From Octopus bimaculoides (taxonomy: Eukaryota), in contig NC_068994.1 in NCBI RefSeq assembly GCF_001194135.2, positions 58,081,651 to 58,145,650 on the forward strand: a stretch of DNA of 64,000 nucleotides, written 5' to 3'. This document shows, piece by piece, positions 3,821-32,261 of the stretch. Both the position numbers and the translations under genes were made by a program. The first letter of the stretch is position 1. The number at the start of each line of letters is the position of its first letter. The notes beneath the pieces are model-generated. The model had not been told where the DNA came from. It did not search any database and saw nothing but the letters and a program-made list of their open reading frames with translations.

Positions 3821-4492
3821 TCAAGTAGAGACGAGGGAGGGGATAACATCACTGAGTTGGGGGGTACCAACCTGTTGTTTTGATTGGTCATTTGTGTTGG
3901 CTGTTTGTGGCATGTGTTGCTGTTGTTGTTGGCTAACGGTTGCCGCCGCTGCCGAGGGTAGAGTTGACTCAGCTTCAATTAAATGTTTGTCAGTGACGTC
4001 ATCATTGTCAACGAAAATTACCTCAGGTTCATCAAGGAGCGTCGGTGGCTGGTCAGGAGGAGGGGTTTTCGGCAAAGGTGGCTTCCATTCATCATCATCT
4101 GTGCTTGTTTTGGTTTCATCTGCTGCTGTTGCCGTATTTGGTGCCGTGCACGGCAGTGCAGCAGCAGCAGTATTTGAAACGGAATCGGTGCCGGCCTGCA
4201 CCTGTTCCACCTGTTCCACCTCACTACTTGGCTCTTTGTCTCCGTCTTCATCTTCAGAAGACAGCCACATTTCGACTTCGATTTCTTCAAATTCCTTTTG
4301 TTCATTGCTCATTGAAGGATTCAATTGGTCTTTCGGTGCCCTCTTCTTCACCTTTCCTTTATCCAATCGTTGTTTAAGGATCTGGGCCACCACCACCAAG
4401 TCTTCCGACGAGAGATTGTTAATTAGCTCTTTAATTACTTTCTTTCGATCAGATTTAGATGCTATGCTGAATAGACAGGGAGTTTTTGAACA
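3821..4492 (-). CDS. Large 3' exon (CSKTPCLFSIASKSDRKKVIKELINNLSSEDLVVVAQILKQ...SLVST*). It ends at the stop at 3821 or at an internal donor after 3872.
   Basis: Poly-T acceptor ttttttattccag in phase 0, open through ORF 3821-4399. The distal part is acidic and Ala/Thr/Pro/Gln-rich. Confidence 0.8.
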   Translation of the reverse strand, partial: CSKTPCLFSIASKSDRKKVIKELINNLSSEDLVVVAQILKQRLDKGKVKKRAPKDQLNPSMSNEQKEFEEIEVEMWLSSEDEDGDKEPSSEVEQVEQVQAGTDSVSNTAAAALPCTAPNTATAADETKTSTDDDEWKPPLPKTPPPDQPPTLLDEPEVIFVDNDDVTDKHLIEAESTLPSAAAATVSQQQQQHMPQTANTNDQSKQQVGTPQLSDVIPSLVST

Positions 4493-5693: not shown

Positions 5694-5767
5694 CAACCCC
5701 TTCGCCTCCTTGCCTGCACCTAATTGCTCCGTTTTCACCTGAGAAACTTCTTTGCCAGCATCAGTAC
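5694..5767 (-). CDS. 74-nt exon (G)TDAGKEVSQVKTEQLGAGKEAKGL, phase 1 to 0
   Basis: Acceptor ctcttctttcag, donor gtaagt. Only the phase-1 reading gives an open frame that continues into the next exon. Confidence 0.8.
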
Positions 5768-7509: not shown

Positions 7510-7555
7510 CAGTTCCGTCTGGGGGAGTGGTCGAGTTCAAACCTTGTGATAAAGT
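7510..7555 (-). CDS. 46-nt exon TLSQGLNSTTPPDGT(G), phase 0 to 1
   Basis: Acceptor tttctcttcag, donor gtaagt. The frame is restored by the next exon. Confidence 0.8.
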
Positions 7556-8829: not shown

Positions 8830-8904
8830 CTGAAGTTGCTTGGCATAAATCAGAAGTTGATCATTCGAAATTCCAGCTTGATTCTCATCACTGCATATAA
8901 TATC
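8830..8904 (-). CDS. JAKMIP: Exon DIICSDENQAGISNDQLLIYAKQLQ
   Basis: Acceptor ttttcctttccag, donor gtgagt, 75 nt, phase 0. It loosely resembles the recalled JAKMIP 'DILGDNGNLRNEEQVAIIQ'. Confidence 0.85.
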
Positions 8905-9399: not shown

Positions 9400-9684
9400 C
9401 CTTCCTTTCTGAAGGATCTGTAGCAGGAGTTCAAGCTGGTGTGGGAATTCCTTAACATTGGGCAAGTTCGCCTCAATGTCCGTGAGTATAGCCACCTTTG
9501 CCTTCCATACTTCGTACTCAGAGTGAGGCATCTCTACAGGTGCCATCGTGCTGTCATTAGCATCTTTTTGCTGCTGTTGCTGTTGTTGCTGTTGTTCAGT
9601 GACGTTGTCGATCAAGAGATCAGCTGTATCGACCCCTTGAGAGACTTTCTCACCGGCGAGGGTAGTATGCGTATTAATGGGAAC
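9400..9684 (-). CDS. Exon with a Q9 tract (VPINTHTT...TEQQQQQQQQQKD...LLQILQKGR, 95 aa)
   Basis: Acceptor gttttttttag, donor gtaagt, 285 nt, phase 0. Confidence 0.87.
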
Positions 9685-10084
9685 CTAAAAAAACGGAAAC
9701 AGTAAAATCACCACCATCACCAAAGCTGGTCAAAAGCGTCTCTTTAGTGACACTTGCACACACACACACACAAGCAAAACCACACAGACACAGACATCAC
9801 ATATATAAGACTATACACAGACAAGTCACTTCACATTATTTCATAGGGTACCTGGGTCATGTCTGCTCTGATAATTGGCAGAGACTTGGTCAGGGAATCC
9901 TCTGTGACGGTCGACAATCGATGGCAAGATGAGCTGCTATGGATCACATTATCCCCAAATATGTATACATGTGACTGAGGGCCACATGTGAACTTGTATT
10001 CCCACCGAAACTCTGAACATGAACATGTGGCTGGAGCTTGTTGAACTCACCCCAGTTGAATGTTGTCACAACTACAGGTATTAT

Positions 10085-10118
10085 TATAATGATGATGATG
10101 ATGATAATTATAAAAATG

Positions 10119-10152
<34 letters not shown>

Positions 10153-10243
10153 TGATGATAATAATGATGATGATAATAATGATGATGATAATAATAATGG
10201 TAATAATAACAATAATAATAATAATGATAATAATAATAATATA
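10085..10243. repeat. Compound (AAT/GAT)n microsatellite directly behind the giant-exon donor
   Basis: Visible in the sequence. It explains the poly-L/S tail of ORF 10108-12315. Confidence 0.95.
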
Positions 10244-10248
10244 ATTAC

Positions 10249-12339
10249 CTTACAGTTGCATTGCTGTTGGAATGTCTTGACTTCTGTGAGAACAGTCTTT
10301 CGTACTTCTTTGTCTCGGAATACTACTGTTCCACATTGTACTCTGTTTACAAAGTCAGAGAAATCTCGCTCAAATTGTTCAATTTTCTGTGATTTTGTTC
10401 TCAGGTCTGTCTTTAAAGTGCCACAAAAATCTATGAGTTGCTCTCGATTCATATCCACAAGTTCAGATTCTAATTCTTTACTGAGCTCTTCTGTACTCTT
10501 GGATGCTTGTTCTGCGATTGGACCTTGTTTATTATCTTGGAACTCACTGGAAGCCTGATTACTGCCAATGTCTTTGAGGCTGGCTTCAAGGGAATTGATG
10601 AGGCCAAGGTATTTGTTTTCTGTACTATGGAAAGGTAAGCTGTTTGTATTTGCTGAGGAATGATTACTATCAGATGATGATAGAGAGGAATGTTCCAGAA
10701 TGTCATGGTCTGCTGAATTTTGGTTGGGATCTGTAGAATCCACTGGAATGGTCTGATTTTGGGTGAGAGATTGGAGTTTTTCAGCAAGCAAATTTTTATC
10801 ACGAGTAACTTCCTCCAATTTCTTTTCCAACTCCATCTTTGAATGTTCATGGTCTGCATATGCATCCTTAATTGCTTCCAAACGCAACCTGAAAGATTGT
10901 AGTTGTTCTCGAAGAGAACCATTAAGTTCTTCTTCAGCCTGGAGTCTGCCCTTTATTTCTGCTTCTAGTTTCAGTAAACTTCCAACTTTTTCTCGCTCCT
11001 CTTTCAATTCACTTTGGCTTTCTTTCTTATCACCATGTACCTTCTGAAGTTCCTCTTTTAGACTTTCACAACTGTCTTCAAGTTCCACTACCTTCTCCAT
11101 GAGTCGTTCTTCATTGCTCTCCAGCTGTACCATCTTCTCTGCCGTTTCTTTCCACTGAGATTCAGCTTCTCGCAACCGACTTGCTTCGGCAAGAAGGTCA
11201 GAGTTCTCCTTCTCGAGTTCACACAATCGTTCGTAATTTGAAGAGACTGTTGAAGAGACTTTAGAAAGGGTTCCATTCTGAGAACCGTCAACTTTGATTC
11301 TGAGTTCTTGATTTTCGGTTTCAAGTTCTTGAATTCTCACAAACAGTGAGGATGTCGGAACTTCTTGCTTATTGTTTTGAGAAACCAAAGAATGTTCATT
11401 GTGCAAAGTATCCTTTCCCTTTTCTGTGGATAGAATTTGGCCTAAATGACCGGATTCTTTTTCTAACAACTTATCAACTTGGTCTTTCAAAGAGTTGTTC
11501 TCATTCCTCAACTGTTCAGTCAACTTTTTCTCTCTCAAACTCATCTCTTCATTTTTCTGGTAACTCAAAACCAATTCATCTTTCAGAGCATTGATTATCT
11601 GCAGTGAATGACTCTCAGGGTCAGCTACTGTATCTATGGCATTCAACAAATTCTCCTGTGAATAACTGAGCTCTTTGATACGCTCTTCATATTTAAGCAT
11701 TTTTTCTACAGAGAAATCAGAGTTTTCACAGAGTTTCAATTTTGCAAGCAGTTCCCGCTCTCTCTCTTCCATTTCTGCAACAGTCTCACTCAGTTTCTGC
11801 TCAGTACTGTACAGCTTCTCCAAATGGTCTTCCAGTTCGGCAATCTTGCTATTTTTAGCTTCTGTAACCTCTTGAAACTTTTCCTCCAGGTTCTTATATT
11901 CTGTTTCCAAATCAAGGCTCACTGTAGATTCTTTGGAATCTGGAGGGTTTTGGCTGAATGACAGTTCTGATGCCAAGGAAACCCCAGTCATAAATTCTTC
12001 TTCTCCTTCCTGAAGTTTCTTCTCCAGTTCCCTATTTAACGATTCCAACATATTCACTTTCTCTTGCAGACCCTCAATTTTGTTGGCATCAGCTTCAACA
12101 ATTTGGTTCCAGTGTTCTCTCGTTTCGCACTCACTATCTTCAAGTTCCACAACCCTACTCTTTAGCAATTTGTTACTTTTTTCTAGGTCCTTGATTTTCT
12201 TCTTCAGGGTTTTCAGCAACTCACTTTGGTCAGAGAGGTCATCCTTATTGCGCAGGCTTTCTCGCAAGTGGTTCTCATCCTCTTGTAATTCTACAAGCTT
12301 CCGAGAGTTTCTCATCTCAGCTTCTTCAAGTGCTTTGAT
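10249..12339 (-). CDS. 2,091-nt giant coiled-coil exon (IKALEEAEMRN...QQQCNCK, 697 aa)
   Basis: Acceptor tactttttcag, donor gtaatt, phase 0. It is E/K/L-rich and lies within ORF 10108-12315. Confidence 0.92.
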
Positions 12340-12571
12340 CTGAAAAAGTACAAGTACTCATGTTGATGATGATGATAATAATAATAACAACAACATACAG
12401 AAAATAGCACTTCTAGGCACTGCGCACATCTTATGTAAAGCACTTTCAATACAATAAAAATAAGAGTATCAAAACAAACCACAGCACATACTGAAGGCAC
12501 ACAGAGCTGCACTTGGTAGTGCAGTGAAAGCATATGATAAAAAAATACGACTACTGAATAATAACAACAAC

Positions 12572-12606
<35 letters not shown>

Positions 12607-12609
12607 CAA

Positions 12610-13395
12610 AAACTGAGCAAGTATCAAGATCTTGAAATAGAAATTAACAAAATGTTAAACTTGAAGACTAAAACAATACCTGTTGTCATAGGTGCCCTAG
12701 GAATGATAGTAAAAGGGGCTGATTGCTACCTAGCTCAGATACCAGGATTATTTACAAAATTGGCAGATGTGAAAAAGAGAAAATGGGAAAATGTGGAAAT
12801 GGAAGTTTGAAGGAAAGAAGCTGCAGTCAGCAATTTTCAAGGACACGAAGAGGTGTTGAATGACAAGGAGGGGTGGTCGTGGCTGAAGAAAAGAATATTG
12901 AGTGAACGAGAGTGAAGGAACAGGCTTTAAAAGTACCATAGATCAAGGGAACAATAAGTCAACAAAACTCAGCCAAATGTCGAATGCGTGAGGATCCAGA
13001 GGAGTCCATGACTTGCATTGTATTGGAATGTCCAGAATTAGCTTCGACCGAACACAAAGCAGAAGTGTGAAAGACTGCAGCAACAGGACAATGGAATTTT
13101 TACAAGAAATCTGCAGCAAAGAGTTATAACCATTTTGTGAAAATAGAAATGCAAGCTATTGTAAATGGCAACAATGTTATTGTGAGACTTTTGTATACAA
13201 ACTGAAAGAAGGCTGGATATTGTTGCTAATGACAACGAAAAGAAATCAAGTTTTATAATCAACGTAGCTTGTTAATTCGAGTAAAAAAGAAAACAGCATT
13301 ATATTGACTTGAAGGATGAAAATTTCAAGCGCTAGAACAAAGATAACCAAGTTATAATAGATCTAATTATTAGGGGACCTTGAGAACAATAATAG
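12610..13395 (+). mobile_element. Decayed R4/Dong-like (RLE endonuclease) non-LTR retrotransposon fragments
   Basis: KLSKYQDLEIEINKMLNLKTKTIPVVIGALGMIVKGADCYLAQIPG (12610-12750), then a degenerate CCHC knuckle KCRMREDPEESMTCIVLECPELA and a PD-like RRLDIVANDNEKK segment. Confidence 0.75.
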
Positions 13396-14414
13396 AATAT
13401 CTGAGAAGAGACCTTTTCAACAATATCTATTGGCCAAAAACACACAGACACACACACACTTTGTGTGTATCAAAATTCACTCTCAAGGATGGTCAAACAC
13501 AATGGGAATGAACCAGGAATCAAATATTGCAAAGCAATTACTCTACACAGGGTTAATCCTGCAGCTATTTAAAAGAAGGTAAATGGAAGGTGGAGGCTGA
13601 CAGAGCCATCAGCCAGCCCTACCTCTCCTTTCTCTGTCTCTCTTTACCAACACCACCACCACCACCACCACCACATATCTTATATCTAGCTATAAAAGGC
13701 TGAAGATATTGATAATCCTTGTATACAAGTGTCAATAATAACAGTTCTCCCACTCCACTTCAGAAGATAATGATGGTGGTGGTGTCAGATGGGGGAGGTG
13801 TGACAGCAAGGAGTCTAAACTCTATAGAAATACTTGAACAATGAAATCCTGAAGCTTTTATTCACTAGGATTAAACCAAAATGATTAAATACCTGCTTTT
13901 AATAACAGGTAGCTATCAACTAAGCCAACAGGGGAGCCATGACCTTCTAGAAATAGCAACCAAATCTCCCTTAAATCACACCTTACTTTAAATTACTGTG
14001 TATTCCACTATTCCATCCAACTAATATTGTAGTCTTATGTCCAGTTTATAAATTAAGCATTGTTATTGCTATAAATAATAATAATAATAATAATAATAAT
14101 ATAAATGCCACAATGGAAGAGCTTCTGAATATAAGACAAAACAATGTGAAGATGTAGCGTAGACCAACAAGTGCACCGGTGGGAGAAGAAGAAACACAGC
14201 ACTTCACAATTGTGATGTAGTGATAATCATGCTTGCCACAACATCATATAAAAGCAACACAGCAAATTTATAAAGAAACCAGTGATACTTTGGATTGGGG
14301 GAGTGAAAACTTACCATAGCAACAACTAGCCAGGGTAGTGACAGAGGTAGATTATACTTATATACACACAAATATACATACGTTATATATATATATATAT
14401 ATATATAAATACAT

Positions 14415-14640
14415 AGAAGGTGGTGCTGAAAAAAAGTTCCTGGTTCTGGGTAATAGAAAATACTGGAGGATCGGTTAATTATGATTTTATTCAACATATT
14501 CCCCTCCCCGCAGATTCACACACTTATTGCAGTGGTTCTTCAGTTTTTCTAAGCCTTGTAAAAGAACTCGAAAGTTTGGGCCTCCAGCCAGGTCTTTCGC
14601 AATACCTGTAAAGCCAGGAATTTTTTAGCACCCCATCATA
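14415..14640. mobile_element. Mariner-type MITE, degenerate
   Basis: Inverted ends ggtgctgaaaaaaagttcctgg / ccaggaattttttagcacccc, embedded in (TA)n. Confidence 0.65.
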
Positions 14641-15176
14641 TATGTATACATACATACACATATACACACAAGAATATACACACACACACACACACACACA
14701 TATGAAACGTGTGTGTGAGTATATGCATGTATATAAATGCATATGTATAGAGGATTACACAGGGAAGAGAAAATGAAGACATAGCCGAAAGACATCATGC
14801 AAAATATTTATAGAGAGAAACCAGGGTTTAAAAGAAGCCAAACCTGGGGTTACGATCCATTAGGGCTTTGAGGGTGCATACGGTTAGTCAGCCACTGTTT
14901 TATTTATACAAACAGGTGTACACCTGCCAATACATGCATACATATACATGCGCACATATACATACTTGCATATAGATACGTATACATGCACATACAAATA
15001 CACACACACATAAATATATATATATATACAAACAAAGTTAAGCCTGTTTTGTTTTAGACTCATCAGGCATCAGCAAGCCTGCAACAGATGTGGACAATCC
15101 TTATTCCACAAATCTTCGCTCAAAAAGCCAAGCCAAGATAAACTAACACACACACACACATATATTGCGCGCGCGC

Positions 15177-15225
<49 letters not shown>

Positions 15226-15317
15226 CATACATGCATACATACATACACACATTGTATATATATCAACATACACAAACATATATGTGTGTATATATATATA
15301 TATATATAAATATATAT

Positions 15318-15365
<48 letters not shown>

Positions 15366-15737
15366 CCACAGTCGTCACAAAATTCACACCTAAATGTAAT
15401 ACATACGAAGACACAAATGCACAAATATATTTACATAGAAACAAATAAGCATAAATACAAATACATGCAAATAATTGTGTATATGTGTGCATGTGTATGA
15501 ATGGCAACACAACTGTATACACTCATATAATTATGTAGGTATGAAAATGCATATATATCACTAGAGGAAACACACACAGAAAACGCGATTCATTCTTTGG
15601 ATAAAGCAAAAATTAAACAGTATCGACAAATATTGAGCACTGTACAATATGCAGCAGGGGTTGGAACATGCACATGCAGTAGCATATTGATGCAGAAGTG
15701 ATGTGCATACATGCATGCTGTACGTCAGGTGATATAC

Positions 15738-16754
15738 CTTATCGTGTAATTTTTCTTCGATGACATCCTTCTCTTTCAGCAGTTGTTCCAGCTCGTTGAC
15801 ATTTCGCAACAAACCCTGAGCCTTGGTCTTCCACTCAGCCTCTCGTTGGCTGATCTTAGCCAACTGCTCCTTCAGTAAGTTCTCGCTGCACTCTAACTCG
15901 CCGACAGTGTCTTCGGCATGCTTCAGCTTGGTCTTCAGTAACATCTCAGATTGCTCTGTCGTGTGGACTTTATCACGGAGGTTCTCGCAGACCTCTTCCA
16001 GCTGATGTAACTTCTCTATGGCCACGTCCACATTGACCACTTCGCCACTGGCTAGCGTAACATCCCCTGAAGTCAGCCTTTCTTTGAGGGCAGCATTCTC
16101 TTCTTTGATCTCTTCCATCTCCTGCAGCATCATCTCGACATGACTCAGAATTCCCTGCTCGCTGAGGATCTGTTTTATACTCTCCAGACACTCGCTCTGT
16201 TGTTCCAGTAACTGCAGGTTCTCATCTTCCTCTTCTGCATCATCATCGTTATCATTATCAAGCAATGAGTTGTCAATATCTAAAGAAGAGGTCAGATCAT
16301 CCCCATCACCACCACCTCTGCCATCATTGCTGTTGCTGTTGTTGTTGTTGTTGTTTCCAGCAGCAAGTTCTGCGATCGTCTCATCAATAATGGCTGACTC
16401 AATCTCTTTCCAGCTATCTTCCACCAGGTTCTGTTTCTTTTCTTCGTCAGCACCAGCAGCTTCATCTTCTGCCACTGCTGTTTCAGAGGGAGCTTCCAAC
16501 TTGGAGCAGGAATCTTGTACAAAGTCAACTTCACTGGAACCTTTTACATCACCATCATCATCCTTATTATATTTAACCTGTGACAAACTCGATGTTACTT
16601 TGTCATCATCCACTTCAGTATCACCAACTGAAAGATGTTTTGTGCCTAATGTCTCACTGCTTTCAGCAATATCATTAGGCCCCATGTCCTGAGAGCTGAA
16701 AACACTTTCACTCACTTGATCTTCGATGTTTACTTCCTCTCCATCTTTAGGTTC
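15738..16754 (-). CDS. 1,017-nt exon: acidic disordered segment followed by coiled coil (EPKDGEE...EEKLHDK, 339 aa)
   Basis: Acceptor ttttgttgcag, donor gtatat, phase 0. It lies within ORF 15561-16763. Confidence 0.9.
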
Positions 16755-18252
16755 CTGCAACAAAATTATAATTAAACATTATTCTTAATTCATTTATCAC
16801 TTTCTGTCTCACTCGTTATTACTTTATCGATTCTTAATTACTCCCATCCCTCCCCTCTCTCCAGCAGTTTCCTTTGTAACTTACTCTGACCCCAAGTTTT
16901 TTAGCCACCCTCGCCTCACCTTCCTCTCTACCCATTTCTTTACCACACTAATGTCAAGCCACATTACTATTTTAAAAAAGAGCCAACAAGCAATGTAGTC
17001 CAAGGTACACTATGACTTATAGAACGTACTTTGATCGTAGCTGATCTGGGTTAAACATCACCAAGTTTGCTTTCTTTAATCCTCAAAGTTACCCATTTTC
17101 TCCACATTAATTTACCCATAATCTATCCTACATATAATTAATTTCAAGTAATTAACTTTAAATTTCTTGTAATTATTTTCCTTTTTCTTTGGGACTTGCT
17201 ATCAGTCACCACAGGATATTTTTTTGATATCATTCAGTACAACTTCTTTTAACTTATCTAAATTTATGTCAATGAGCCACTTGAATTATTTCCTCTTAGC
17301 TCATTTTATGTTTTTAATTATTACTGGCAGAAAATCAACTGTAACATTTTCTATATTAAAAAAATCTGTTAACTAATTAAAACTGACTCAAATAGATTGT
17401 ACTTATGCTGATGAGCTCTAGTAAGATAGAAAGATGTTCATTACTTGTTTCCCTTGCCTGTAAACAAAGATAAAAATCTTCCTCCAAAGATAAATTAATT
17501 GAGGGGTTCATTTTGAATTCCTTAAAATTATCTTCATTGAGACTCACTAATAATTATTAAGTCTTTCGTTTTCTTTTTCCAACAGAATGGTAAATTCCAG
17601 TTAAGAATCCATAGCATATATCATCCCTAAACTTAATTAATTATCTTCTTCCTTTGTCTCCCTACCACACACCAATAGTCCTATATCTATCCTGAAATAC
17701 TAATATATACACTAGATCAGAGGGAAAATATTTAATCTATAAATGACAATAATTATAATTTTCACACTTAAAAACAAATGAACAAAAAAAGAACCAAATA
17801 TACAAAAAAGAAAAAGTTAACAATATTTTCAAGTTTTCTATAAAAGTCTAAGAGCATAAAATTGAAGATTGAACTGATCTGAACATAACGCAGAATTGGT
17901 TTGGTAATTTATAATTCTGAGTTTTTTTTTTGTTGTTGTCAAAAGGTTGAATTCACCACAATGTATACATGTCATGTATATGTATGTGTGTGTACATTGA
18001 AATTTTTTTGACACTATGACATTCACTGAAGACTAGGCCTTAGGATAATCCCATCACACAATCTTTGCAAATAATATGTTAATCACCCCCGACCCCAGTC
18101 CTTTATTTTAATCTGTAAATAGGTTTTAGCCGGAATAAAAAGACGACGAAATAAATGTTCTTGTTTTCCCTTAATGCTGGCAAATATAAGAAAGAACAAT
18201 TATAAGAAAGAAATGTGAAGGATCCTGATTGAATATTTGGTAAAGTTCTCAC

Positions 18253-18378
18253 CTTGTCCAGTTTTAAGTTGGAATAAGACTTTTGTGAAAGTTGTTCTTC
18301 TAATTGAACTTTGTCCTGCTGCAAACCGATTATTTTACCTTGGAGTTCAATAGCAATTTTCTCCAATTCTTCAATCCG
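18253..18378 (-). CDS. Coiled-coil exon (RIEELEKIAIELQGKIIGLQQDKVQLEEQLSQKSYSNLKLDK)
   Basis: Acceptor ctgtctccag, donor gtgaga, 126 nt, phase 0, clear heptads. Confidence 0.88.
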
Positions 18379-19162
18379 CTGGAGACAGAGTGAAAAACAG
18401 AGAAAGATGATGAATAAATGGTAAAAAAAATATATAGATACAACAAGGGGAAAAATCGAAATCTTTAAGGATGGTAGAGAGAGAGAGAGAGAATGTTATT
18501 TAAGAGAAAAATCAAGAAAATTCTATAAAGATCTTATTTTCTTAAGGTGGAAAGTTTAAGCAAATGACTTATTTTTATCAACTGGTTGTTAATGTAAAAA
18601 ACTGGAAGAAATTCCATTAGGCATTTTGACCAAAGTTTTAATGAATCTACCATTCCCACCACCCTTGATTAATATTAATTAGAATCGTTTCACTGATGAT
18701 TTCTTACAAGGCCACATTTATAGAAGGGGTGGGTGGGGGTATAGCTAAGTAATAAGTAGTGCTTTGAGTGAAATTTATTTCATTGACCTACATATGTATA
18801 CCCAGGTCAAATTCAGTTGCTTTACTTTTTATTTTTTGCTTGTTTCAATCATTGGACTGCGGTCATGCTGGGGCACTGCTTTGAACAATATTTAGTCAAA
18901 TGAATTGATTCCAGTATCTAAAACGGCCCAGTTGCTAAAATGGCCCTGGCTACAAGGCCTCAAATTCCAATGCCAAGTACTTAAGGAGTCATTCAACTAA
19001 ATATTTAACTCGTACTTAATTTAAAGACCCCTTAAGGACAACGGGGAGACATATCTATTTACTTTGAATAATTACTCCAAAAACATGCAAATATCAAAAT
19101 TTAAAAGAACTGTCCCCTTCCACGAATAGGGAATTCTTGAAAAACCAAAATGTGAAACCAAC

Positions 19163-19453
19163 CTGTTTGGATTCTTGAAGCTTTTTACCATCCTTAGTTT
19201 CTGTTGGATGTCCTGCCCCTGTCTTAATCTCTGTGGGTTTTGGAGGGAAATCCATGACCGGTCGTTCAGTGAGTTCAATGATCTGCTTCCTCAAGCTGTT
19301 CACTTCCTCCCTTAACAACTGCTCCTCTTCCCCACTCTCACTGGAAACAATGCTGGCTGGCTCACCATCTCCTCCTCTTCGCTCCTCCCTAAATAATGAC
19401 CTCTTCACTCCAGCAGACTTTTTACCACTTTCTTCATCACAATTCAGTTGATG
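19163..19453 (-). CDS. First exon of the large inserted block (HQLNCDEESGKK...LLREEVNSLRKQIIELTE...KLQESKQ, 97 aa)
   Basis: Acceptor ccattttcag, donor CAG|gttggt, 291 nt, phase 0. It lies within ORF 19094-19513. Confidence 0.82.
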
Positions 19454-20435
19454 CTGAAAATGGAATACAGAAAAATAATTAACCATACAACTATAATTAA
19501 CAAAAATAAACATACAAATTAACTACGAATAATTATTATCAAATGATTCCTTTTGCATCAAAACCAGCCTTATTCGGCCAAAATATTCTGCCTGTTTTAT
19601 GTTCAAATTAAGTACCAGTTACGAACTGGGGTCACCTCCCCCAAAAATTTTGGGCCTTGTGCCTAGAGTAGACAAAAAAAGATTACAAAGTCTGGAATCA
19701 GACACTTGTGTATTTTTAGAGTTTGGAATCAATGTTGGTTGTTCAGAGAGAATACACTTTGGTCAATGTATAACATAAAATAAATAAATAAATATATATA
19801 AATAACACAATGGTTTGTTACAATGACACCAGAACATAGATTAAGAGAGGGGTGGTGTATGTGATGGAATCAATCATTCTCCACCACAGTATATTAAAAG
19901 GTAATTATTTTATTCCATAGATCTCACCACAAGTAAAAAATGGAAAAAAAAAAAAAGAGAAAAACAGAAATATAAAGTAAGAAATCAATCTGAGTGAGAT
20001 TTGAACTAATGTAAGTAAATGTCACAAACCAGTTTGTCCACCTCACTAATGAATCTGCCAACCTTTGCTGCTGCTGCTGCTACTTGTAGTAACAACAACA
20101 ACAACAAAAAAATAATTTTCTTATGGTCTCTGGTTCCATTCTGCTGTGTGGTATCTTAGACAAGTGTCTTTTACTATAGCCCTGGGTCAACCGATGCTTT
20201 GTTAGTGGATTTGGAAGATGGAAACTGGAAGAAGCCTCATGTATACATATGTGCGTGTGTGTATGTATATAAGCATACACATTCCTATGGCCTTTGGAAG
20301 GGAATCCAGCTGTAGAAGCCGTGACAAAACAGACAACGGAACCTGGCAGGGCTTCTGGTCATGCCAGTTCCTGTTAAACCATCCAACCCATGCCAGCATG
20401 GAAAACAAACGTTAAATAATGATGAGATGATGATG

Positions 20436-20472
<37 letters not shown>

Positions 20473-20792
20473 AGCACTCCATCTGTTATGATGACAAGGG
20501 TTCCAATTGATTCATTGATCAACAGAACAGCTTGCTCGTGAAATTAACGTACAAGTGGCTGAGCACTCCACAGACGTGTGTACCCTTAACGTAGTTCTCA
20601 GGGATATTCAGCGTGACACAGAGTGTGACAAGGCTGGCCCTTTGAAATAAAGGGACCACTCATTTTTGACAGCTGAGTGTACTGGAGCAACGGGAAATAA
20701 AGTGTCTTGTTCAATGACACAATGGGTCACCAGGAAGTGAACTCACAACCTTACGATTGTGAGCCGAATGCCCTAACCACTCAGCCACGCAC
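20473..20792 (-). mobile_element. tRNA-derived SINE (family E), near full length
   Basis: The minus-strand head ggtgcgtggctgagtggttagggcattcggctcacaatcgtaaggttgtgagttc has Pol III A/B-box-like motifs. The tail abuts (AT)n. Confidence 0.7.
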
Positions 20793-21591
20793 CTCCACCT
20801 GCATGTATGTATGTAGCCATGTTTTGACATCACACGATGGCAGTAAATGAGCCTCATTGTCATACAAGTGAGGTTGTTTGTTTAGGGGAAATATTACTTA
20901 GGGTTGGTGACAGGAAAAGTATCCAGCTATAGAAAAATCAACAAATTCAACCTCATCCATGCAAGTATAGAAGTTAAATGATGACATCATCATCATCTTC
21001 ATAATACATTTGTTTCTTTTTTTTTGCAATGGTCGGGGTTGGATAGGTGTCTCACCTCATCATCTGACAATAAAAAGACTGACAACTTCTGTTGTGTGTG
21101 ACATTTGTATGGTTGCGTGTATGCAATGCATGCGTTGCATGTGCGGTTGTGTTTGCATGGAGATGCATGCATACACGTCAGTTGGTGCATGGAGGTTTTA
21201 AGGTTAAACGTTATGTTTGTGAAACAGAACACTTTGAGATAGAAAAGCAGAACTGTTGTAAGTGGTAACATGTTTAGACATTAACCTAGGGAGACACAGT
21301 TCAATTCCCAGCCACAGCAGATGCAAAGACGCATACAACAAAGATTTCGTCTTCACACGTCTTAAATTCATACATTATTTTAGATGTTTTGGTGCGTATC
21401 AGTACACACACACACACACACACACAGCTGGGCATATATACACACATCGATACACACACAATTTGTACACCCACATGCACATACACCTGTGAACACACAC
21501 ACACACATATAGAGAATCTATGCTTATACATGCAGCATGTTGCGGTTGATCTGAATAAACAAAAAATGCTTTCATTAAATGTGTAAAATCT

Positions 21592-21660
<69 letters not shown>

Positions 21661-21717
21661 TATTGCAACCATCAGTGGATCTGCAACAACTTTGCAACAT
21701 ACACAAAGACAAGAAAA

Positions 21718-21750
<33 letters not shown>

Positions 21751-22917
21751 AACATTTGTACACCAGCAACACCAACAAAGGTGCATTCATAGCAGCTGCA
21801 GCAGAATTGTGCATTAGGTAATGGCAAGATGCACTGCAATTGTCTAAATGGCATGTTTGCATTTCTGTGCAGCTTTGCTTCCACTTAAAAATGTGCGGCG
21901 TACATTGGTGGTGGAGGCGGCGGTGGGGTGTGGTACAGCAGCAGTATAAACTGTAGCTGTGGAGGTTGTAGCACATGTGGTGACAGCAGTGGCAGTTGTC
22001 GGGGTTGTAGTACATTCATTTGATGGTAGTGCCATGTATTGTAGCACAAGTGGTAACAGCAGCTTACATGTTGGGATAATTAGTCTTTTTGAAGGCTAAT
22101 TATAATTATTAATAGAGTTTGGAAGGGGGAATGTCCTGAGCAAGGATTGAAACTGGGTCACTAATAACAAAACAATTTTAAGTGTGTACTGCGGGAGCTA
22201 ATAACAATAACAACAATGAATACAAGCAGACAGCATCCCATTGCACGTCCTGCTAGAAATAGCAGCCAAATTCGCCTCAAAATCAAACCTTACTGTCTTA
22301 GAAAAAAATGGCAATAGAATGATCATAAGAACACTGTCTTGGAAAAAGCCAGAATAGCCATGGGTGGAATATATGTATAAAAGCACACACACACACACAC
22401 GTTTATGTATTATAATCTTTGGCATTCAGATTCCTGTCAAATGTGAAGCTAATTTATTCACAATGGTTTTCAATTAAGCCTCTTGTAGCAGCTAGATTTT
22501 GGTGGGATTGTTTATTTTTAGAATGACATTGTAGGGTAGGTGTGAGAGGCTGGATCTAGTCGGTTTAAACATAAAACAAGGAGAATATTTGGGTTGCATA
22601 TTGCTGAGAAATATGTGTATATAAACGCGGATGTATGGTAAGAAGGCTGCTTCCCAATCACATGGTTCTAGGCTCAGTCCCACCGAGTGGCATCTTCGGC
22701 AAGTGTCTTCTATAGCACCAGGTCAACCGAAGGCTTGTGAGTGAATTTGGAAGAAACTGAAAGAAGCCCATCGTTATATTCCATTCCATAACAGCTACCT
22801 CTGATGAGCACAGGGTTATATAATTGGACTGTTACCTAACACTCTGTCGAATCCCTGCCATGAAACCGATTAGTAAGATTGGCCGTAATGGATAAATAAT
22901 ACTCTACACTTCGATTA

Positions 22918-22957
<40 letters not shown>

Positions 22958-23067
22958 GGAGAGAGAGAGANNNNNNNNNNAGAGAGAGAGAGAAAGAGAG
23001 AGAGAGAAAGAGAGAACTATAAATATCAATTTAAATATGTGGAGCAACAGGCTGTGTACCAAACCAC

Positions 23068-23149
23068 CTGGATCGAGGTGTGACTGAACTTGGTTCCCTG
23101 GCGAAACACCGCAGCTTCATGGTTCATGCGCTACAAACAATCCTGATAT
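23068..23149 (-). CDS. Candidate alternative exon with an internal ATG (CDS 23127-23068, MNHEAAVFRQGTKFSHTSIQ)
   Basis: Strong acceptor tttttattttcctag, an in-frame stop before the ATG, donor CAG|gtggtt, phase 0. Confidence 0.42.
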
Positions 23150-23936
23150 CTAGGAAAATAAAAATCCGCAAGGCCGTCTTAAAATTTAAATAGATGTGCT
23201 ACGACGAAAAGAACAGACATCCATTGTTTTGTTTTTTAAAAGAAAAAACATTCCCCCCTACCAAACCTTGCCACTGGGTAATTGGTTGGTCAAAATAAGC
23301 TTTTAAACTCCCCCCAAAAGAAGAGAAAACGCGCATCCACGATAATAATGGACTTTCCAGTTGGGAACGATACACGGGTGCCCAGTTGGAACCACCTACT
23401 CGTTGAATTAGAAAGTGGTTGAGTACTCCTTAGATATGTTTGCCCCTAATGTATTTCACACAAAGAATCAGCTTGACAGTGTGACAAGGCTTTGGTGCTG
23501 ACCCGGTCAAAGACGTCTTAGAAGGCATGGAGAGGGAATGAACCAGCGATCTAAGGATCGCGAAACGAAAACACACTCACATACATATGCACACATATGT
23601 ACATACATATATATGTATATACGTGTACATAGAGTTGTACACGTATATAGGCACACACACATGGTCACACACGTTCGACACACACAAACACTTAAACACA
23701 CGTGTCAAGTGATCACCACCGATACCACCACCACCTCCACTGCCATGGTAGTTGTACCAATAAACGTTTTAAAAGACTTACAAGACGGAAGCAGGGAGCG
23801 AAACCATTCGATTGCAGCGACTTCAATATTCCGTTGAACGATAGTGTAATTGTGTGACTGCTCGCATTACCATGTGTGTGTGTATGTATGTGTGTGAGAG
23901 AGAGAGAGACAGAGCAATTGTTAGCAGCCGGGATCT

Positions 23937-24005
<69 letters not shown>

Positions 24006-25537
24006 CAGATGGGGAGTAGAGAATGAGCCAGTCTCTCAATATAGAGCGGAATGGAATGTGTATATCGTATGTGGAGTGGAATGTGTGTATGTGTAAATGT
24101 GTGTGCGTGTGCGTGCATGCGTCAGTTCAGCGGCTCCTACTAGGATAAAAATGTGTTAGTGTAATAATGCTGTGTGTGTGCGTGTGTACGTACACACACA
24201 CACACGCGAACGGGTGCATATGCCTTGTATAAGAAAAGTGGGAGACGTTGACAGCGAGATTTGGCAAGCGGTGGTGTTTGTTATGACGATGATGAAGTTG
24301 ACGGTGAGAGAGGACAGTATGTGACAGTGCTCGAGGAAATAGGGTAGCTTAATAGGGATTAGTAGAATATGAAGGGAAGGGAAAGGTGGTGAGGGGAAGT
24401 GGCAAATACATGGCAGAGAAGGAGAAGGTGAGAGACAGGCAAAGCAAGGAGGAAGGTAGAGAAGGGGAGGGAGGGAGAGACGCGGATAAAACTAGATTTT
24501 TAAGGTAAAGGGGTAACAGTGATGGAAGTGAGTGCAGAGGTACTAAGGGGACTGGAGAGACGGTTTATGGTGCATGTGATGTAAGGCAGTGAAGCTTGTG
24601 GCTGTGGGGTGAGAAGTTTGCTTCCAAACTACTTTGGTTATGGGTTCTGTCCCACTGAACGGCACCTTGGGCAAATGTTCTCTACTTATAACTTGGAACT
24701 GACCGAAGCCTTGTCAGCAGATTTAGTAGAGGGAAACTGAAAGAAGTCCATTCTATCTATCTGTGTGTGTGTGTGTGTGTGTTTGCATCTGTGTTTGTCC
24801 CTTATAACTGCTTGGCAACTGGTGTTGATGTGTTTACATCCTTGCAACTTAGTTCAGCAAAAAGAGAGACAGACAGAATAAGGACCAGGCTTAAAAAATA
24901 AAAGAACTGACAGGTGGTGTGACCCAGCATGGCCGCAGTCTAATGACTGAAGCAGGTAAAAAAGAAAAGACCCTTAGCGAGAAGAAGGACTGCCTGGAGT
25001 GTGTGAGGGGTGACTGTGAAGGCTGAAGAATCATGGAAGATGAAGAGACTATGTGTGTTATCAAATTAAACAGAGATGATCCCTTCACAAGCCAGTAAGG
25101 GATAAAGTACATTATCATTTCATTCATATAGTAAAATAACGAACTTATTGTATACAGTGCCCAGGTGCCCTACAACTCATCAGAAAAAGTTAGCCAAACG
25201 TGCATGGACAGTAGATAGAATATTAGTGAAGGGGTCGTTAGAAAACAAAGGTAAGGGGCCCACAGCAGGTGTACTGTTGGTGAATTTCAGGAAGCATGGA
25301 AATTTTGAAGGATGTAGTGTCTCGACAGCCAACAACTGATGAAGGTGGTTTATTCCATGCTTTAGCAATTCTGAGCATGAAAGAATTGTTTCCAAAAGTC
25401 ATGGGGGCTATGTTGTTCATAGCAGAACACAAGGCAAAGAATAGGACCTGATTCACAAAAAATCCCTCACAAAAAACCTCCCAAACAAATATTTCTATTT
25501 TTCCTAAAGTATTGAAAACAATTGACGAACTTCTTAC

Positions 25538-25660
25538 CGTTTTTGTCTGATGATCCGAGCATTCAGAATTTTCCTCTTCATTGCCATAATCGTCAACCTC
25601 TGACTCTTCAAGTTTGTTACTAACATATTCTAGTATAAACGTATTAAATTGGCTAAACAT
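25538..25660 (-). CDS. Candidate alternative start exon (MFSQFNTFILEYVSNKLEESEVDDYGNEEENSECSDHQTKT)
   Basis: gctgccATG Kozak-like context, 41 codons, strong donor ACG|gtaaga, phase 0 compatible with the exon at 19453. Confidence 0.5.
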
Positions 25661-26211
25661 GGCAGCTGCTGTCTGAAGGTGTCTGTGTGTCTGATTCAGT
25701 TGTTGTTGTCGTTGTTATATGGAGATGTCACATGGAGGCACTTTGGTCATCAATAATGGGCAATGTTACATTCTGAGTGCCATTTTTTTGCTGCTATGTT
25801 GGACAACCAGACCACAGCAAGAGGGGTGTGTGTGTGTGTGTGTGTGTATGTGTGTACAGAGATGAATTTACTGAAGGCAGGGATAGAGAGAGGGGGGGGG
25901 AGGGAAAGGAAGGGAAGATGAGAGAGAGAGAGAGAGAGAGACTAGAGGGAAAGGAAGAGGGAGTTCAGTATTACAACGCCAACACATAATAGTTGATACT
26001 TTGGACCAACACACATCATTGATATTGGTGTGTGTACATGACTGTACATTTAAGTAGGTGTGTGTGTGTGTGTAAACTGTGTGTGAGTAATAAGTGTGTG
26101 TGTGTGTGTGTGAATACAGTATCAATGAAATAGTGACGTCAGATCTTTTGAAGGAGGCAAACGTTCAACAAGTCATCTAAACACCAGATTTTACATACAT
26201 ATCCAACCCGT

Positions 26212-26437
26212 AACCCTTTAGCATTCAGTTAACTCCCATCAAATGTGATGCCTATTAATTCACATTCTTTGAATTAATTACACATTATCTCATAGCTTTG
26301 AGATTCTGATGATGTAATTTTTTAATTTTCAGAATGACGTTGTAGGTTAGGTTTGAAAGGCAAGATCTGGCCAGTTTGAACATAAAACAGGAAGGATATT
26401 TGGGCCAAATAAGGTCGGCTTAAATGCCAAATGGTTC
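26212..26437. mobile_element. Degenerate second piggyBac-type MITE family
   Basis: taaccctttagcattc...aaatgccaaatggtt. Internal sequence is shared with 56870-56975 (ending aatgctgaagggttaa), 22510-22610 and 27800-27870. Confidence 0.55.
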
Positions 26438-27069
26438 AAATATAAAATAACAAACAAATGCAAAAAATAAAACAAACTGCTGATCCTATTCTCCAAGAGT
26501 TTTGCCTCTTTTCAGCCTTCCATAATCTCAAATATTTAATTGAACCTCACAGTTCAAGTGAACGAGTAATTTGCTGTACGAGCTGAGACTCATACAAATT
26601 TTTGTCTTTAAGTAGAAGCAGAAATCCGCAGTACGAGCACACAAATCGTCCCATCTTTAAGGTAATTCAGTTAATAAAACCAGTTTACATATTTCTTTTG
26701 CTTTCTCTTTTTTATAATTGTCATTTTACTTGTAACTACACTTTTTCTGTTTTAAAACGCATAGAAAAATAATTTTTAGTGGTTTTGTGGGACTGGAATG
26801 GATTAATTATATTTTAGTTAATTTCAACGGGGAAAATTGATTTGTAAAACGAGTAAATTGTTAGACGAGCTCGGTCATGGAACAAATTAAACTCATACTG
26901 CGACGCATCATTGTATTTAACTGTAAAGCAAAACAGGAATATGTTTGTGTGTGTGTGTGTGTGTGTGTGTGCTTATCTCTCCATTGATCTGTTTGATTGC
27001 ATACATAAGAGAAAGAGCACTCAATGCATTCAGTAAAGTCCATATATTTGTTAGAAGTTGTTGATTTAT

Positions 27070-29152: not shown

Positions 29153-29190
<38 letters not shown>

Positions 29191-31241: not shown

Positions 31242-31290
<49 letters not shown>

Positions 31291-32159: not shown

Positions 32160-32162
<3 letters not shown>

Positions 32163-32195
<33 letters not shown>

Positions 32196-32230
32196 AAGAG
32201 AGAGAGATAGAGAGAGAGAAAGAGAGAGAG

Positions 32231-32261
<31 letters not shown>

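What the first reader, a model, noticed from the sequence alone, without database searches (positions are those of the whole stretch)
9400..19453. JAKMIP/Marlin-family gene carrying a roughly 1,270-aa extra coiled-coil block
Seen: five consecutive phase-0 exons (291+126+1017+2091+285 = 3,810 nt) follow the JAKMIP CC3 core in frame, giving at least about 1,820 aa in this window even without the N-terminus. Established: vertebrate JAKMIP1-3 are about 630-850 aa microtubule/kinesin/receptor-trafficking adaptors with no such block. Inference: this is a golgin-sized tether version of JAKMIP, or a JAKMIP gene followed closely by a separate coiled-coil gene. I cannot tell whether the block is cephalopod-specific or shared with other molluscs.
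Basis: partly seen in the sequence, partly recalled or inferred. Interest (0 to 1): 0.75.

Follow-up and report, generated by a model that had tools for sequence, protein, structure and literature searches.

The report
Middle of a giant JAKMIP/RIM-BP-like scaffold gene
The five exons are real and do belong to the same gene as the JAKMIP-type exons. That gene is a roughly 2,500-residue scaffold protein with a RIM-BP-like SH3 end, and it is already present under uninformative names in public annotations of other molluscs, so the block is ordinary for this family.

Summary
Five minus-strand, phase-0 exons with AG/GT borders (19163-19453, 18253-18378, 15738-16754, 10249-12339, 9400-9684) give 3,810 nt, or 1,270 codons, with no stop.

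They are one piece of a 17-exon, 1,805-aa in-window model (55996 to 3872). That model aligns in a single HSP to residues 126-1953 of a 2,560-aa Argonauta hians protein (67% identity). It also aligns to a 2,488-aa ORF that is uninterrupted in an 18-kb marine JGI contig, which I infer to be a spliced mRNA. So the CC3 exons and the block are one gene.

The gene is not a JAKMIP orthologue with an add-on. Its relatives in Argonauta, abalone, scallop and the mRNA contig all carry JAKMIP_CC3 near the N-terminus, a long helical middle, and SH3-Ig_RIMBP2-SH3 at the C-terminus. The C-terminal part lies outside the window. It is also not the canonical RIM-BP, which has RIMB1_N and exists separately in octopus. 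It matches the divergent sea-urchin "Rimbpb".

About half of the block is shared with gastropod and bivalve proteins, which are even longer (3,500-4,360 aa): exon B plus block aa 350-720. Only about 690 aa of the block is a helical rod.

Interest is low to moderate.

The parts
55835..55996 (-). Exon N1 (54 aa, KENSSCQ...LRQACS), the first exon recognisable in the window. It corresponds to Argonauta residues 126-180.
   Evidence: tblastn against P0005, 89% identity; AG/GT borders, phase 0.
46302..46373 (-). Exon N2 (24 aa, EKDRRIELIQHRKMKKRLRRSLEK), where the JAKMIP_CC3 match begins.
   Evidence: Pfam match starts at in-window residue 56.
42631..42744 (-). Exon X1 (38 aa, CANTNGDDDACSVDSEVSVSSLP...), part of JAKMIP_CC3.
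42093..42218 (-). Exon X2 (42 aa, YAREEIERSYRQLMREH...), part of JAKMIP_CC3.
41718..41801 (-). Exon X3 (28 aa), part of JAKMIP_CC3.
40275..40337 (-). Exon X4 (21 aa, EPRLLEEKETLQSANIEMQKK). Its two borders coincide with exon borders inferred for fish JAKMIP2.
38975..39088 (-). Exon X5 (38 aa). It ends the CC3 domain and holds the most conserved motif, DLEFRILELEE.
33242..33295 (-). Exon X6 (18 aa, SAEDGNDALEDFLKFDIT), the last exon before the 13.8-kb intron.
19163..19453 (-). It is mostly disordered, with the conserved stretch LREEVNSLRKQIIELTERP.
18253..18378 (-). Exon B (42 aa). Its motif LE..A.ELQ.K...LQQ.K..LE is invariant in cephalopod, abalone and scallop proteins.
15738..16754 (-). Exon C (339 aa). 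It holds an acidic, Asn/Asp-rich disordered region, then the start of the helical rod at LQLLEQQSECLESIKQILSEQ.
10249..12339 (-). Exon D (697 aa), the main helical rod. Its first ~240 aa are shared with gastropod and bivalve proteins. Its tail is non-coiled.
9400..9684 (-). Exon E (95 aa, with a Q9 tract and the W.AKVAILTDIEA motif). It ends in a gtaagt donor, not a stop.
8830..8904 (-).
7510..7555 (-). Exon G (46 nt). It ends in phase 1.
5694..5767 (-). Exon H (74 nt). It starts in phase 1.
3872..4492 (-). Exon T (207 aa). It holds the helix pair SDRKKVIKELINNLSSEDLVVVAQILKQ and the proline-rich motif DDDEWKPPLPKTPPP. It ends in a CAG|gttggt donor, and the rest of the gene (about 600 aa with SH3-FN3-SH3 in relatives) lies outside the window.
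19454..33241 (-). The 13.8-kb intron between the CC3 exons and the block. It is the candidate site of an internal promoter for CC3-less isoforms. This is an inference from relatives only.

Best explanation
The region 9400-19453 is the central part of one large minus-strand gene that crosses at least window positions 55996 to 3872 and runs off the low end of the window. It probably runs off the high end too.

The gene is the octopod orthologue of an uncharacterised molluscan scaffold protein with three parts:
- an N-terminal JAKMIP-type CC3 coiled coil;
- in all full-length relatives, a C-terminal SH3 - Ig/FN3 (Ig_RIMBP2) - SH3 module of the RIM-binding-protein type.

It is a paralogue of canonical RIM-BP, the same type as sea-urchin 'Rimbpb'. 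It is not a JAKMIP orthologue.

Shown here: the exon structure, the continuity of CC3 and block in one ORF, the domain architecture of the relatives, partial conservation of the block across three mollusc classes, and the helical character of the block.

Inferred mechanism, about 40% confidence: the protein works as an extended dimeric tether or scaffold. The block acts as a rod-shaped spacer, on the order of 100 nm if fully coiled, plus flexible acidic linkers. These separate an N-terminal coiled-coil docking site from C-terminal SH3 domains. In vertebrate JAKMIP1, a fragment spanning residues 549-627 binds the CLASP2 TOG4 domain. The SH3 domains would bind PxxP ligands, as RIM-BP SH3 domains bind RIM and Ca2+-channel tails. 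A conserved cephalopod KPPLPKTPPP motif in exon T could be an internal SH3 ligand.
For: Exons and frame.

One gene:
- A single BLASTP HSP joins the in-window protein (1-1805) to Argonauta GAB1604314.1 (126-1953) at 67% identity, and to P0037 (116-1821) at 51.5%.
- All 16 junctions are continuous in both proteins.
- P0037 is an uninterrupted 7,467-nt ORF on JGI contig Ga0192852_10000003. The Argonauta gene spans 102 kb, so I infer that the JGI contig is spliced mRNA.
- A Tara Oceans transcript fragment, P0007, covers the exon D tail, E, F and T and continues beyond.

Architecture: JAKMIP_CC3 plus SH3_2/SH3_9 plus Ig_RIMBP2 is found in Argonauta, P0037, Haliotis and Mizuhopecten.

C-terminal module: it is closest to solved RIM-BP2 and Drosophila RIM-BP SH3 and FN3 structures.

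Paralogy:
- Canonical Crassostrea and Lingula Rimbp carry RIMB1_N, not JAKMIP_CC3.
- Octopus bimaculoides has a separate canonical Rimbp fragment that matches oyster SH3-II/III at 4e-73.
- Sea-urchin Rimbpb matches this family's FN3-SH3 end at 1e-37 to 1e-42, against 1e-22 for canonical Rimbp.

Shared block: abalone aligns at 37% identity and scallop at 35% over in-window aa 613/657-983, and scallop at 33% over aa 332-432. The exon-B motif is invariant.

Helical rod.

Literature used for the inferred mechanism: PMC11297316 for JAKMIP1 binding to CLASP2 TOG4; PMC7337501 for RIM-BP SH3 ligands and the role of its N-terminal coiled coil.
Against: - No RNA data from the window's own species were available. 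The 33242-to-19453 junction is supported only by orthologues and by one cross-species ORF that I infer to be mRNA.
- The SH3-FN3-SH3 end and the first ~125 residues are not in the window, so their presence in this species is inferred.
- The AlphaFold model is of low confidence (mean pLDDT 50, single sequence). It supports helicity only, not coiled-coil pairing.
- No functional study of this family was found, so every statement about partners and cellular site is by analogy.
- The family has only two SH3 domains and one detectable FN3, so RIM-BP ligands cannot simply be assumed.
- RefSeq isoforms without CC3 in abalone and scallop show that the block can be expressed without the JAKMIP-type domain.
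Confidence: 0.85

Rival explanations
1. There are two genes: a short JAKMIP-like gene ending near 33242, followed by a separate coiled-coil gene starting upstream of 19453.
For: The two parts are separated by a 13.8-kb intron. RefSeq lists CC3-less isoforms in scallop (starting at M460) and abalone (starting at M637), which begin about 20 residues after the CC3 domain.
Against: - Exon A starts at an acceptor site and exon X6 ends at a donor, both in phase 0.
- One uninterrupted 7.5-kb ORF, read as mRNA, and the Argonauta model run through the junction.
- The same order (CC3, exon-B motif, block core) is seen in three mollusc classes.
- The CC3-less forms in relatives are isoforms of the same locus, not separate genes.
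Confidence: 0.05
2. It is a true JAKMIP orthologue that gained a cephalopod-specific coiled-coil insertion.
For: There is a full-length, high-scoring JAKMIP_CC3 match. A 145-residue gapless alignment to fish JAKMIP2 has 38% identity. Two intron positions around exon X4 appear to be shared with fish JAKMIP2.
Against: - There is no similarity to JAKMIP outside CC3.
- The relatives end in SH3-Ig_RIMBP2-SH3.
- Part of the block is present in abalone and scallop, whose proteins are longer still. The block is therefore ancestral to molluscs at least, not a cephalopod insertion.
- The tail of the block (in-window aa 984-1805) was found only in cephalopod-like sequences. This may reflect lineage-specific sequence or simply fast divergence.
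Confidence: 0.07
3. It is the cephalopod orthologue of canonical RIM-BP, the presynaptic active-zone scaffold.
For: The SH3 and FN3 domains of the relatives are closest to RIM-BP2 and Drosophila RIM-BP structures. One scallop model is named after RIM-BP1, as 'Peripheral-type benzodiazepine receptor-associated protein 1'.
Against: - Canonical mollusc and brachiopod Rimbp carry RIMB1_N, three FN3 domains and an SH3-II/III tandem. This family has JAKMIP_CC3, no RIMB1_N, one FN3 and two SH3 domains.
- Octopus bimaculoides has a distinct canonical Rimbp.
Confidence: 0.03

Closest known systems
Uncharacterised mollusc gene models: Argonauta hians GAB1604314.1 ('protein MLP1 homolog isoform X2', 2,560 aa), Haliotis asinina XP_067656819.1 ('CEP250-like', 4,296 aa), and Mizuhopecten yessoensis XP_021350814.1 ('CEP290-like', 3,508 aa) with OWF51703.1
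   Same: The window is colinear with the Argonauta protein over all 1,805 in-window residues (67% identity). With abalone and scallop it shares CC3 (44-49%) and the block core (35-37%), and with scallop also an exon-A/B stretch (33%), all in the same order. The exon-B motif is invariant in all of them. These are orthologues.
   Different: The gastropod and bivalve proteins have 1,000-1,800 more residues of central coiled coil. The cephalopod tail (exons E to T, with the KPPLPKTPPP motif) was not detected in them.
Sea-urchin 'Rimbpb' (XP_011663614.1), set aside as too divergent in the Rimbp survey of PMC7565545
   Same: Its FN3-SH3 end matches the C-terminus of this family better than it matches canonical Rimbp (E of 1e-37 to 1e-42 against 1e-22). 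It also ends shortly after a single SH3, as this family does.
   Different: Only a 218-aa fragment is available, so it is unknown whether it carries JAKMIP_CC3 and a long rod. The matching part is outside the window.
Canonical RIM-binding proteins (RIM-BP1/TSPOAP1, RIM-BP2, RIM-BP3; Drosophila Rbp)
   Same: They share the type of SH3 and Ig/FN3 domains and the general plan: an N-terminal coiled-coil region, then SH3, FN3 and SH3. By analogy the role is an elongated adaptor.
   Different: Canonical members have RIMB1_N, three FN3 domains and three SH3 domains. This family has JAKMIP_CC3, one FN3, two SH3 domains and a far longer middle. Octopus has its own canonical gene as well.
Vertebrate JAKMIP1-3 (Marlin-1, NECC1, NECC2)
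   Same: The CC3 domain is clearly homologous, and the motif LEFRILELEE is nearly identical. Two intron positions appear to be shared.
   Different: JAKMIPs are 630-915 aa, purely coiled coil, with no SH3 or FN3 domain, and the literature calls them vertebrate-specific (PMC3765260). No similarity was found outside CC3.
Golgins and other long coiled-coil tethers
   Same: They have a long helical rod interrupted by disordered breaks. Automated names of the relatives include 'golgin subfamily A/B-like'.
   Different: No GRIP, GRAB or transmembrane anchor was found, and no golgin family matched in Pfam. The resemblance is compositional only.

Membership tests
JAKMIP (JAKMIP1-3) | JAKMIP_CC3 domain (PF16034) | tested here: met
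   In-window protein residues 56-246, E = 5.3e-32, 111.6 bits against a cut-off of 30.2, profile positions 2-196 of 200.
JAKMIP (JAKMIP1-3) | Homology to JAKMIP beyond CC3 (the C-terminal coiled coil and tail after LEFRILELE) | tested here: not met
   BLASTP against fish JAKMIP2 fragments aligns CC3 only. hhalign of the mollusc and fish post-CC3 segments gives a probability of 0.3%.
JAKMIP (JAKMIP1-3) | N-terminal microtubule/kinesin-binding coiled coils (CC1, CC2) | not testable with these tools
   No vertebrate N-terminal reference sequence could be retrieved. The first ~125 residues of the gene are not in the window. The Argonauta N-terminus has no Pfam match.
JAKMIP (JAKMIP1-3) | Overall architecture: 630-915 aa, coiled coil only, no SH3 or FN3 | tested here: not met
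   The orthologues are 2,488-4,362 aa and carry SH3-Ig_RIMBP2-SH3. JAKMIP sizes are from PMC3765260.
Canonical RIM-BP | RIMB1_N N-terminal domain (PF25566) | tested here: not met
   It is present in Crassostrea and Lingula Rimbp (E about 1e-38). It is absent from P0005, P0008, P0009 and P0037 at E <= 0.01 and from the in-window N-terminal part at E <= 0.1.
Canonical RIM-BP | Three SH3 domains (SH3-I, then the SH3-II/III tandem) and a cluster of three FN3 domains | tested here: not met
   The relatives show two SH3 stretches and one Ig_RIMBP2/FN3. The defining rule is from PMC7337501. These parts lie outside the window.
Canonical RIM-BP | Being the single Rimbp orthologue of the species | tested here: not met
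   Octopus bimaculoides Ocbimv22025169m is a distinct canonical fragment. It matches oyster Rimbp at 4e-73, against 1e-19 for this family.
JAKMIP_CC3 / SH3-Ig_RIMBP2-SH3 scaffold (Rimbpb type; uncharacterised) | Colinear full-length similarity to the Argonauta, mRNA-contig, abalone and scallop members | tested here: met
   Single HSPs cover all 1,805 in-window residues (Argonauta) or 1,681 of them (P0037). The conserved segments are in the same order in abalone and scallop.
JAKMIP_CC3 / SH3-Ig_RIMBP2-SH3 scaffold (Rimbpb type; uncharacterised) | C-terminal SH3-Ig_RIMBP2-SH3 module in this species | not testable with these tools
   Exon T ends in a splice donor at 3872, and no further exon was found in 1-3871, which holds an N gap. 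The module would lie beyond the window.
Golgins | Golgi-anchoring end (GRIP or GRAB domain, or a transmembrane tail) | tested here: not met
   No such Pfam match was found in the block or in the full-length relatives.

The most novel reading that the evidence does not exclude
The gene belongs to an ancient bilaterian second RIM-BP-like family that seems not to be described in the literature. The family is present in molluscs, and by its C-terminal module in a sea urchin. It joins a JAKMIP-type CC3 coiled coil to an SH3-FN3-SH3 end.

If so, two published statements need revising: that JAKMIPs are vertebrate-specific (PMC3765260), and that invertebrates other than the sea urchin have a single Rimbp (PMC7565545). 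Vertebrate JAKMIPs could then be truncated descendants of such a scaffold that lost the SH3 module. The shared CC3 sequence and two apparently shared intron positions would fit that.

A literature search for papers mentioning JAKMIP together with RIM-BP names found none that linked them.
Probability: 0.3. Interest if true: 0.55.

Novelty: already known. Interest (0 to 1): 0.28.

Why it matters
As posed, the finding does not reveal anything new. The block is the normal middle of a large gene whose orthologues are already in GenBank and RefSeq.

Three things of modest value come out of the check:
1. The automated names of these proteins ('MLP1 homolog', 'CEP250-like', 'CEP290-like', 'golgin-like') hide a consistent architecture: JAKMIP_CC3, a rod, then an SH3-Ig_RIMBP2-SH3 end.
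2. Molluscs have a second RIM-BP-like gene beside the canonical active-zone RIM-BP. This matters to anyone cataloguing cephalopod synaptic or cytoskeletal scaffolds.
3. The CC3 domain, studied only in vertebrate JAKMIPs, sits in a very different protein in invertebrates. That gives a testable lead on where JAKMIPs came from.

Tried and rejected
- **Word-indexed protein searches.** The search with the whole 1,270-aa block returned nothing, probably because its 8,000 candidates were swamped by low-complexity words. The search with CC3 plus exons A-C found only four fish JAKMIP2 fragments. The search with the Argonauta SH3-FN3-SH3 end found nothing. These negatives say little. The exhaustive HMMER search is the one that found the relatives.
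- **Pfam on the block alone.** No family matched.
- **A resemblance seen by eye.** Exon E/T looked like the vertebrate JAKMIP segment 'IPDLIKLLDILGDNGNLRNEEQVAIIQ'. BLASTP did not support this (E > 1), and hhalign of the post-CC3 regions gave a probability of 0.3%.
- **A weak BET/ET-domain match in exon T.** It had E = 0.079, below threshold, so I did not use it.
- **Bacterial promoter/terminator scan.** It is irrelevant for a eukaryotic gene.
- **Exons outside the model.** Searches for exons encoding Argonauta residues 1-125 (above 56 kb) and 1955-2150 (below 3.9 kb) gave no credible match. Both stretches of the window contain N gaps.
- **The 39-aa cassette in the mRNA contig.** It lies between the exon C and D equivalents, is not flanked by GT..AG, and has no counterpart in the window's C-D intron.
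- **Foldseek on the AlphaFold model.** I did not run it, because the model's confidence (pLDDT 50) is too low for matches to mean anything.

Full report
**What is in the sequence**

The window looks like cephalopod nuclear DNA. It has about 38% G+C, dense TA/CA/AAT microsatellites, a SINE-like interspersed repeat and several assembly gaps.

- Each is preceded by AG with a pyrimidine tract and followed by GT.
- Each begins and ends in phase 0.
- Joined, they give 3,810 nt, or 1,270 codons, without a stop.
- With this base composition a stop is expected about every 16 codons. The chance of the 749-codon open stretch around exon D is about 3e-21.

Exon E ends in a good donor (gtaagt) and not in a stop. 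Guided by relatives found later, I located four more exons downstream: 8830-8904, 7510-7555, 5694-5767 and 3872-4492. The last of these again ends in a donor.

Upstream I located eight exons: 55835-55996, 46302-46373, 42631-42744, 42093-42218, 41718-41801, 40275-40337, 38975-39088 and 33242-33295.

All 17 exons have AG/GT borders. The joined frame is 5,415 nt, or 1,805 aa, with no stop. Only the junction between the 7.5-kb and 5.7-kb exons is in phase 1.

The upstream exons encode a complete JAKMIP_CC3 domain (PF16034, E = 5e-32, 111.6 bits against a cut-off of 30.2).

**Is the block part of the same gene as the CC3 exons?**

The word-indexed protein searches were uninformative. An exhaustive HMMER search with a trimmed block found 32 relatives. 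Five pieces of evidence follow from them.
- **Argonauta.** The best hit is a 2,560-aa protein of the octopod Argonauta hians (GAB1604314.1, 'protein MLP1 homolog isoform X2'). Its gene spans 102 kb. The whole in-window protein aligns to its residues 126-1953 in a single BLASTP segment at 67% identity.
- **mRNA contig.** A second relative, P0037 (2,488 aa, 51.5% identity over 1,681 in-window residues), is encoded as one uninterrupted 7,467-nt ORF on an 18-kb JGI contig from a marine sample. The octopod genes are split by many introns over 50-100 kb, so I infer that this contig is a spliced mRNA.
- **Junctions.** All 16 in-window junctions, including 33242 to 19453, are continuous in both proteins.
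- **Tara fragment.** A Tara Oceans transcript fragment, P0007, independently runs from the tail of exon D through exons E, F and T into the next part of the protein.
- **Other mollusc classes.** In abalone (Haliotis asinina XP_067656819.1, 4,296 aa) and scallop (Mizuhopecten yessoensis XP_021350814.1, 3,508 aa), CC3, the exon-B motif and the block core occur in the same order. Identities are 44-49% for CC3 and 35-37% for in-window residues 613/657-983.

The 'two genes' reading is thus refuted as far as it can be without RNA from the window's own species.

One qualification remains. RefSeq lists isoforms of the scallop and abalone genes that begin at a methionine about 20 residues after the CC3 domain. 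An internal promoter in the homologous place, the 13.8-kb intron at 19454-33241, is possible.

**What the gene is**

Pfam finds the same architecture in the Argonauta protein, the mRNA-derived protein, and the abalone and scallop proteins: JAKMIP_CC3 near the N-terminus, a long middle with no family match, and SH3 - Ig_RIMBP2 - SH3 at the C-terminus.

The C-terminal module is closest, among solved structures, to the SH3 domains of human RIM-BP2 (2csi, 5e-16) and Drosophila RIM-BP (4z88, 4z8a), and to the Drosophila FN3 array (6q9m).

It is nevertheless not the canonical RIM-BP.
- Canonical Rimbp of oyster and Lingula carries RIMB1_N (E about 1e-38), three FN3 domains and the SH3-II/III tandem, and has no JAKMIP_CC3. 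Their sequences come from the supplement of PMC7565545.
- The family here has no RIMB1_N, two SH3 domains and one FN3.
- Octopus bimaculoides has its own canonical Rimbp fragment. It matches oyster Rimbp at 4e-73 but matches this family only at the level of single SH3 domains.
- The same paper set aside a sea-urchin 'Rimbpb' as too divergent. That fragment matches the FN3-SH3 end of this family at 1e-37 to 1e-42, against 1e-22 for canonical Rimbp.

The gene is therefore a member of a second, RIM-BP-like family that is older than molluscs.

**Relation to JAKMIP**

The similarity to vertebrate JAKMIP is genuine but local.
- A gapless 145-residue alignment to fish JAKMIP2 has 38% identity, and the motif LEFRILELEE is nearly identical.
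- The borders of the 21-aa exon X4 coincide with exon borders that can be read from intron read-through pieces in a mis-predicted fish protein.
- Beyond CC3 there is nothing. BLASTP finds only generic coiled-coil similarity. A profile-profile comparison of the post-CC3 segments gives a probability of 0.3%.

JAKMIPs are 630-915 aa coiled-coil proteins without SH3 domains, and they are described as vertebrate-specific (PMC3765260; PMC12732012).

**Anatomy of the block**

A simple heptad score and a single-sequence AlphaFold model (mean pLDDT 50, used only for secondary structure) agree on three zones.
- Block residues 1 to about 320 are mostly acidic and disordered, including Asn- and Asp-rich runs. 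The one short helix is the exon-B motif.
- Residues from about 318 to 1005 form long uninterrupted helices of 60-100 residues with short breaks, with no strands. This is the picture of a coiled-coil rod.
- The last ~260 residues, and exons F to T, are short helices and disorder.

The parts shared with abalone and scallop are exon B and block residues from about 350 to 720. The rest was found only in cephalopod-like sequences, which may reflect fast divergence. The abalone and scallop proteins have 1,000-1,800 more residues of central coiled coil. Within its family, the octopus protein has a short middle, not an extra one.

**How it most likely works**

This section is inference. By its parts, the protein should be an elongated, probably dimeric scaffold.
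- **The C-terminal SH3 domains.** They are of the type that in RIM-BP binds proline-rich motifs of RIM, Munc13 and Ca2+-channel tails, while the N-terminal coiled coil of RIM-BP docks to ELKS/BRP (PMC7337501).
- **The N-terminal CC3.** In JAKMIP1, residues 549-627 bind the TOG4 domain of CLASP2 through a helical motif with a conserved Phe and Glu (PMC11297316). The conserved DLEFRILELEE segment is a candidate for that motif. I could not check the residue numbering, so this is a lead and not a test.
- **The block.** It would serve as a spacer rod on the order of 100 nm, with flexible acidic linkers.
- **The proline-rich motif.** DDDE[WL]KPPLP[KN][ST]PPP in exon T is conserved in cephalopods and is a candidate internal SH3 ligand.

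Where in the cell the protein acts (synapse, Golgi, centrosome or elsewhere) cannot be said from sequence.

**Novelty**

That is essentially what was found. Gene models containing CC3, the block and the SH3 end exist in GenBank and RefSeq for Argonauta, two Haliotis species and Mizuhopecten, under uninformative automated names. The Argonauta name suggests transfer from an octopus RefSeq entry, which is my inference.

I therefore rate the finding as already known, and its interest as low to moderate.

What does not seem to be in the literature is the family itself. No paper linking JAKMIP to RIM-BP was found. The Rimbp survey counted one Rimbp per invertebrate apart from the sea urchin. The idea that this family is ancient and may be the stock from which vertebrate JAKMIPs arose is the most novel reading left open. 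It needs broader sampling and trees that I could not make here.

Noticed in passing
window 638-908, 5490-5643, 7786-7965, 20288-20434, 28626-28819, 34746-34853, 38282-38463, 49124-49280, 51206-51406, 53396-53589, 55444-55830, 60495-60589 and others: A SINE-like interspersed repeat of about 150-270 bp has at least 16 copies in both orientations (74-86% identity), all in introns. One copy ends 4 nt from exon N1.
   Followed up: partly
window 10086-10245; 9568-9596; exon C around 15900-16000: An (ATA)n microsatellite of about 160 bp begins 4 nt after the donor of the 2.1-kb exon D. Inside the coding sequence there is a Q9 tract (exon E) and Asn/Asp-rich runs (exon C). These differ in length from the Argonauta protein.
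   Followed up: no
window 19454-33241 (intron), by analogy with P0048 and P0042: RefSeq isoforms of the scallop gene (X8, starting at M460) and the abalone gene (X6, starting at M637) begin about 20 residues after the CC3 domain. This suggests an internal promoter at the place homologous to this 13.8-kb intron.
   Followed up: partly
L001 202-7668 (JGI 3300018952, Ga0192852_10000003): This marine contig holds the whole 2,488-aa relative as one uninterrupted ORF, followed by more than 6 kb of further sequence, so it is probably a full-length mRNA with a long 3' UTR. It carries a 39-aa cassette between the exon C and D equivalents. The cassette is not flanked by GT..AG and has no counterpart in the window.
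   Followed up: partly
window 3872-4492 (exon T), in-window protein residue 1736: The proline-rich motif DDDE[WL]KPPLP[KN][ST]PPP is conserved in the octopus, Argonauta and mRNA-contig proteins, but was not found in abalone or scallop. It is a candidate ligand for the protein's own SH3 domains.
   Followed up: partly
P0004 (Sinocyclocheilus JAKMIP2-like) against window exons 41718-41801, 40275-40337 and 38975-39088: This fish gene model contains intron read-through pieces that begin with V and end with Q. They mark exon borders at exactly the positions of the octopus X3|X4 and X4|X5 junctions, which would make these two intron positions in CC3 conserved.
   Followed up: partly
window 25241-25714 (minus strand): A 158-codon open stretch inside the large intron has a tail (…SFMLRIAKAWNKPPSSVV…) that, from memory, resembles the C-terminal end of non-LTR retrotransposon ORF2 proteins. 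It is probably a transposon remnant.
   Followed up: no
window 2813-3129, 38062-38191, 58446-59205; 10-N gaps at 22971, 42845, 45616: There are assembly gaps at these positions. The gaps at 2.8-3.1 kb and 58.4-59.2 kb could hide the next downstream exon and an upstream exon of the gene.
   Followed up: no
PMC7565545 supplement against the relatives of the window gene: The published Rimbp survey counts one Rimbp in molluscs. The data here show a second, divergent RIM-BP-like gene in cephalopods, gastropods and bivalves, of the same type as the sea-urchin 'Rimbpb' that the survey excluded.
   Followed up: yes
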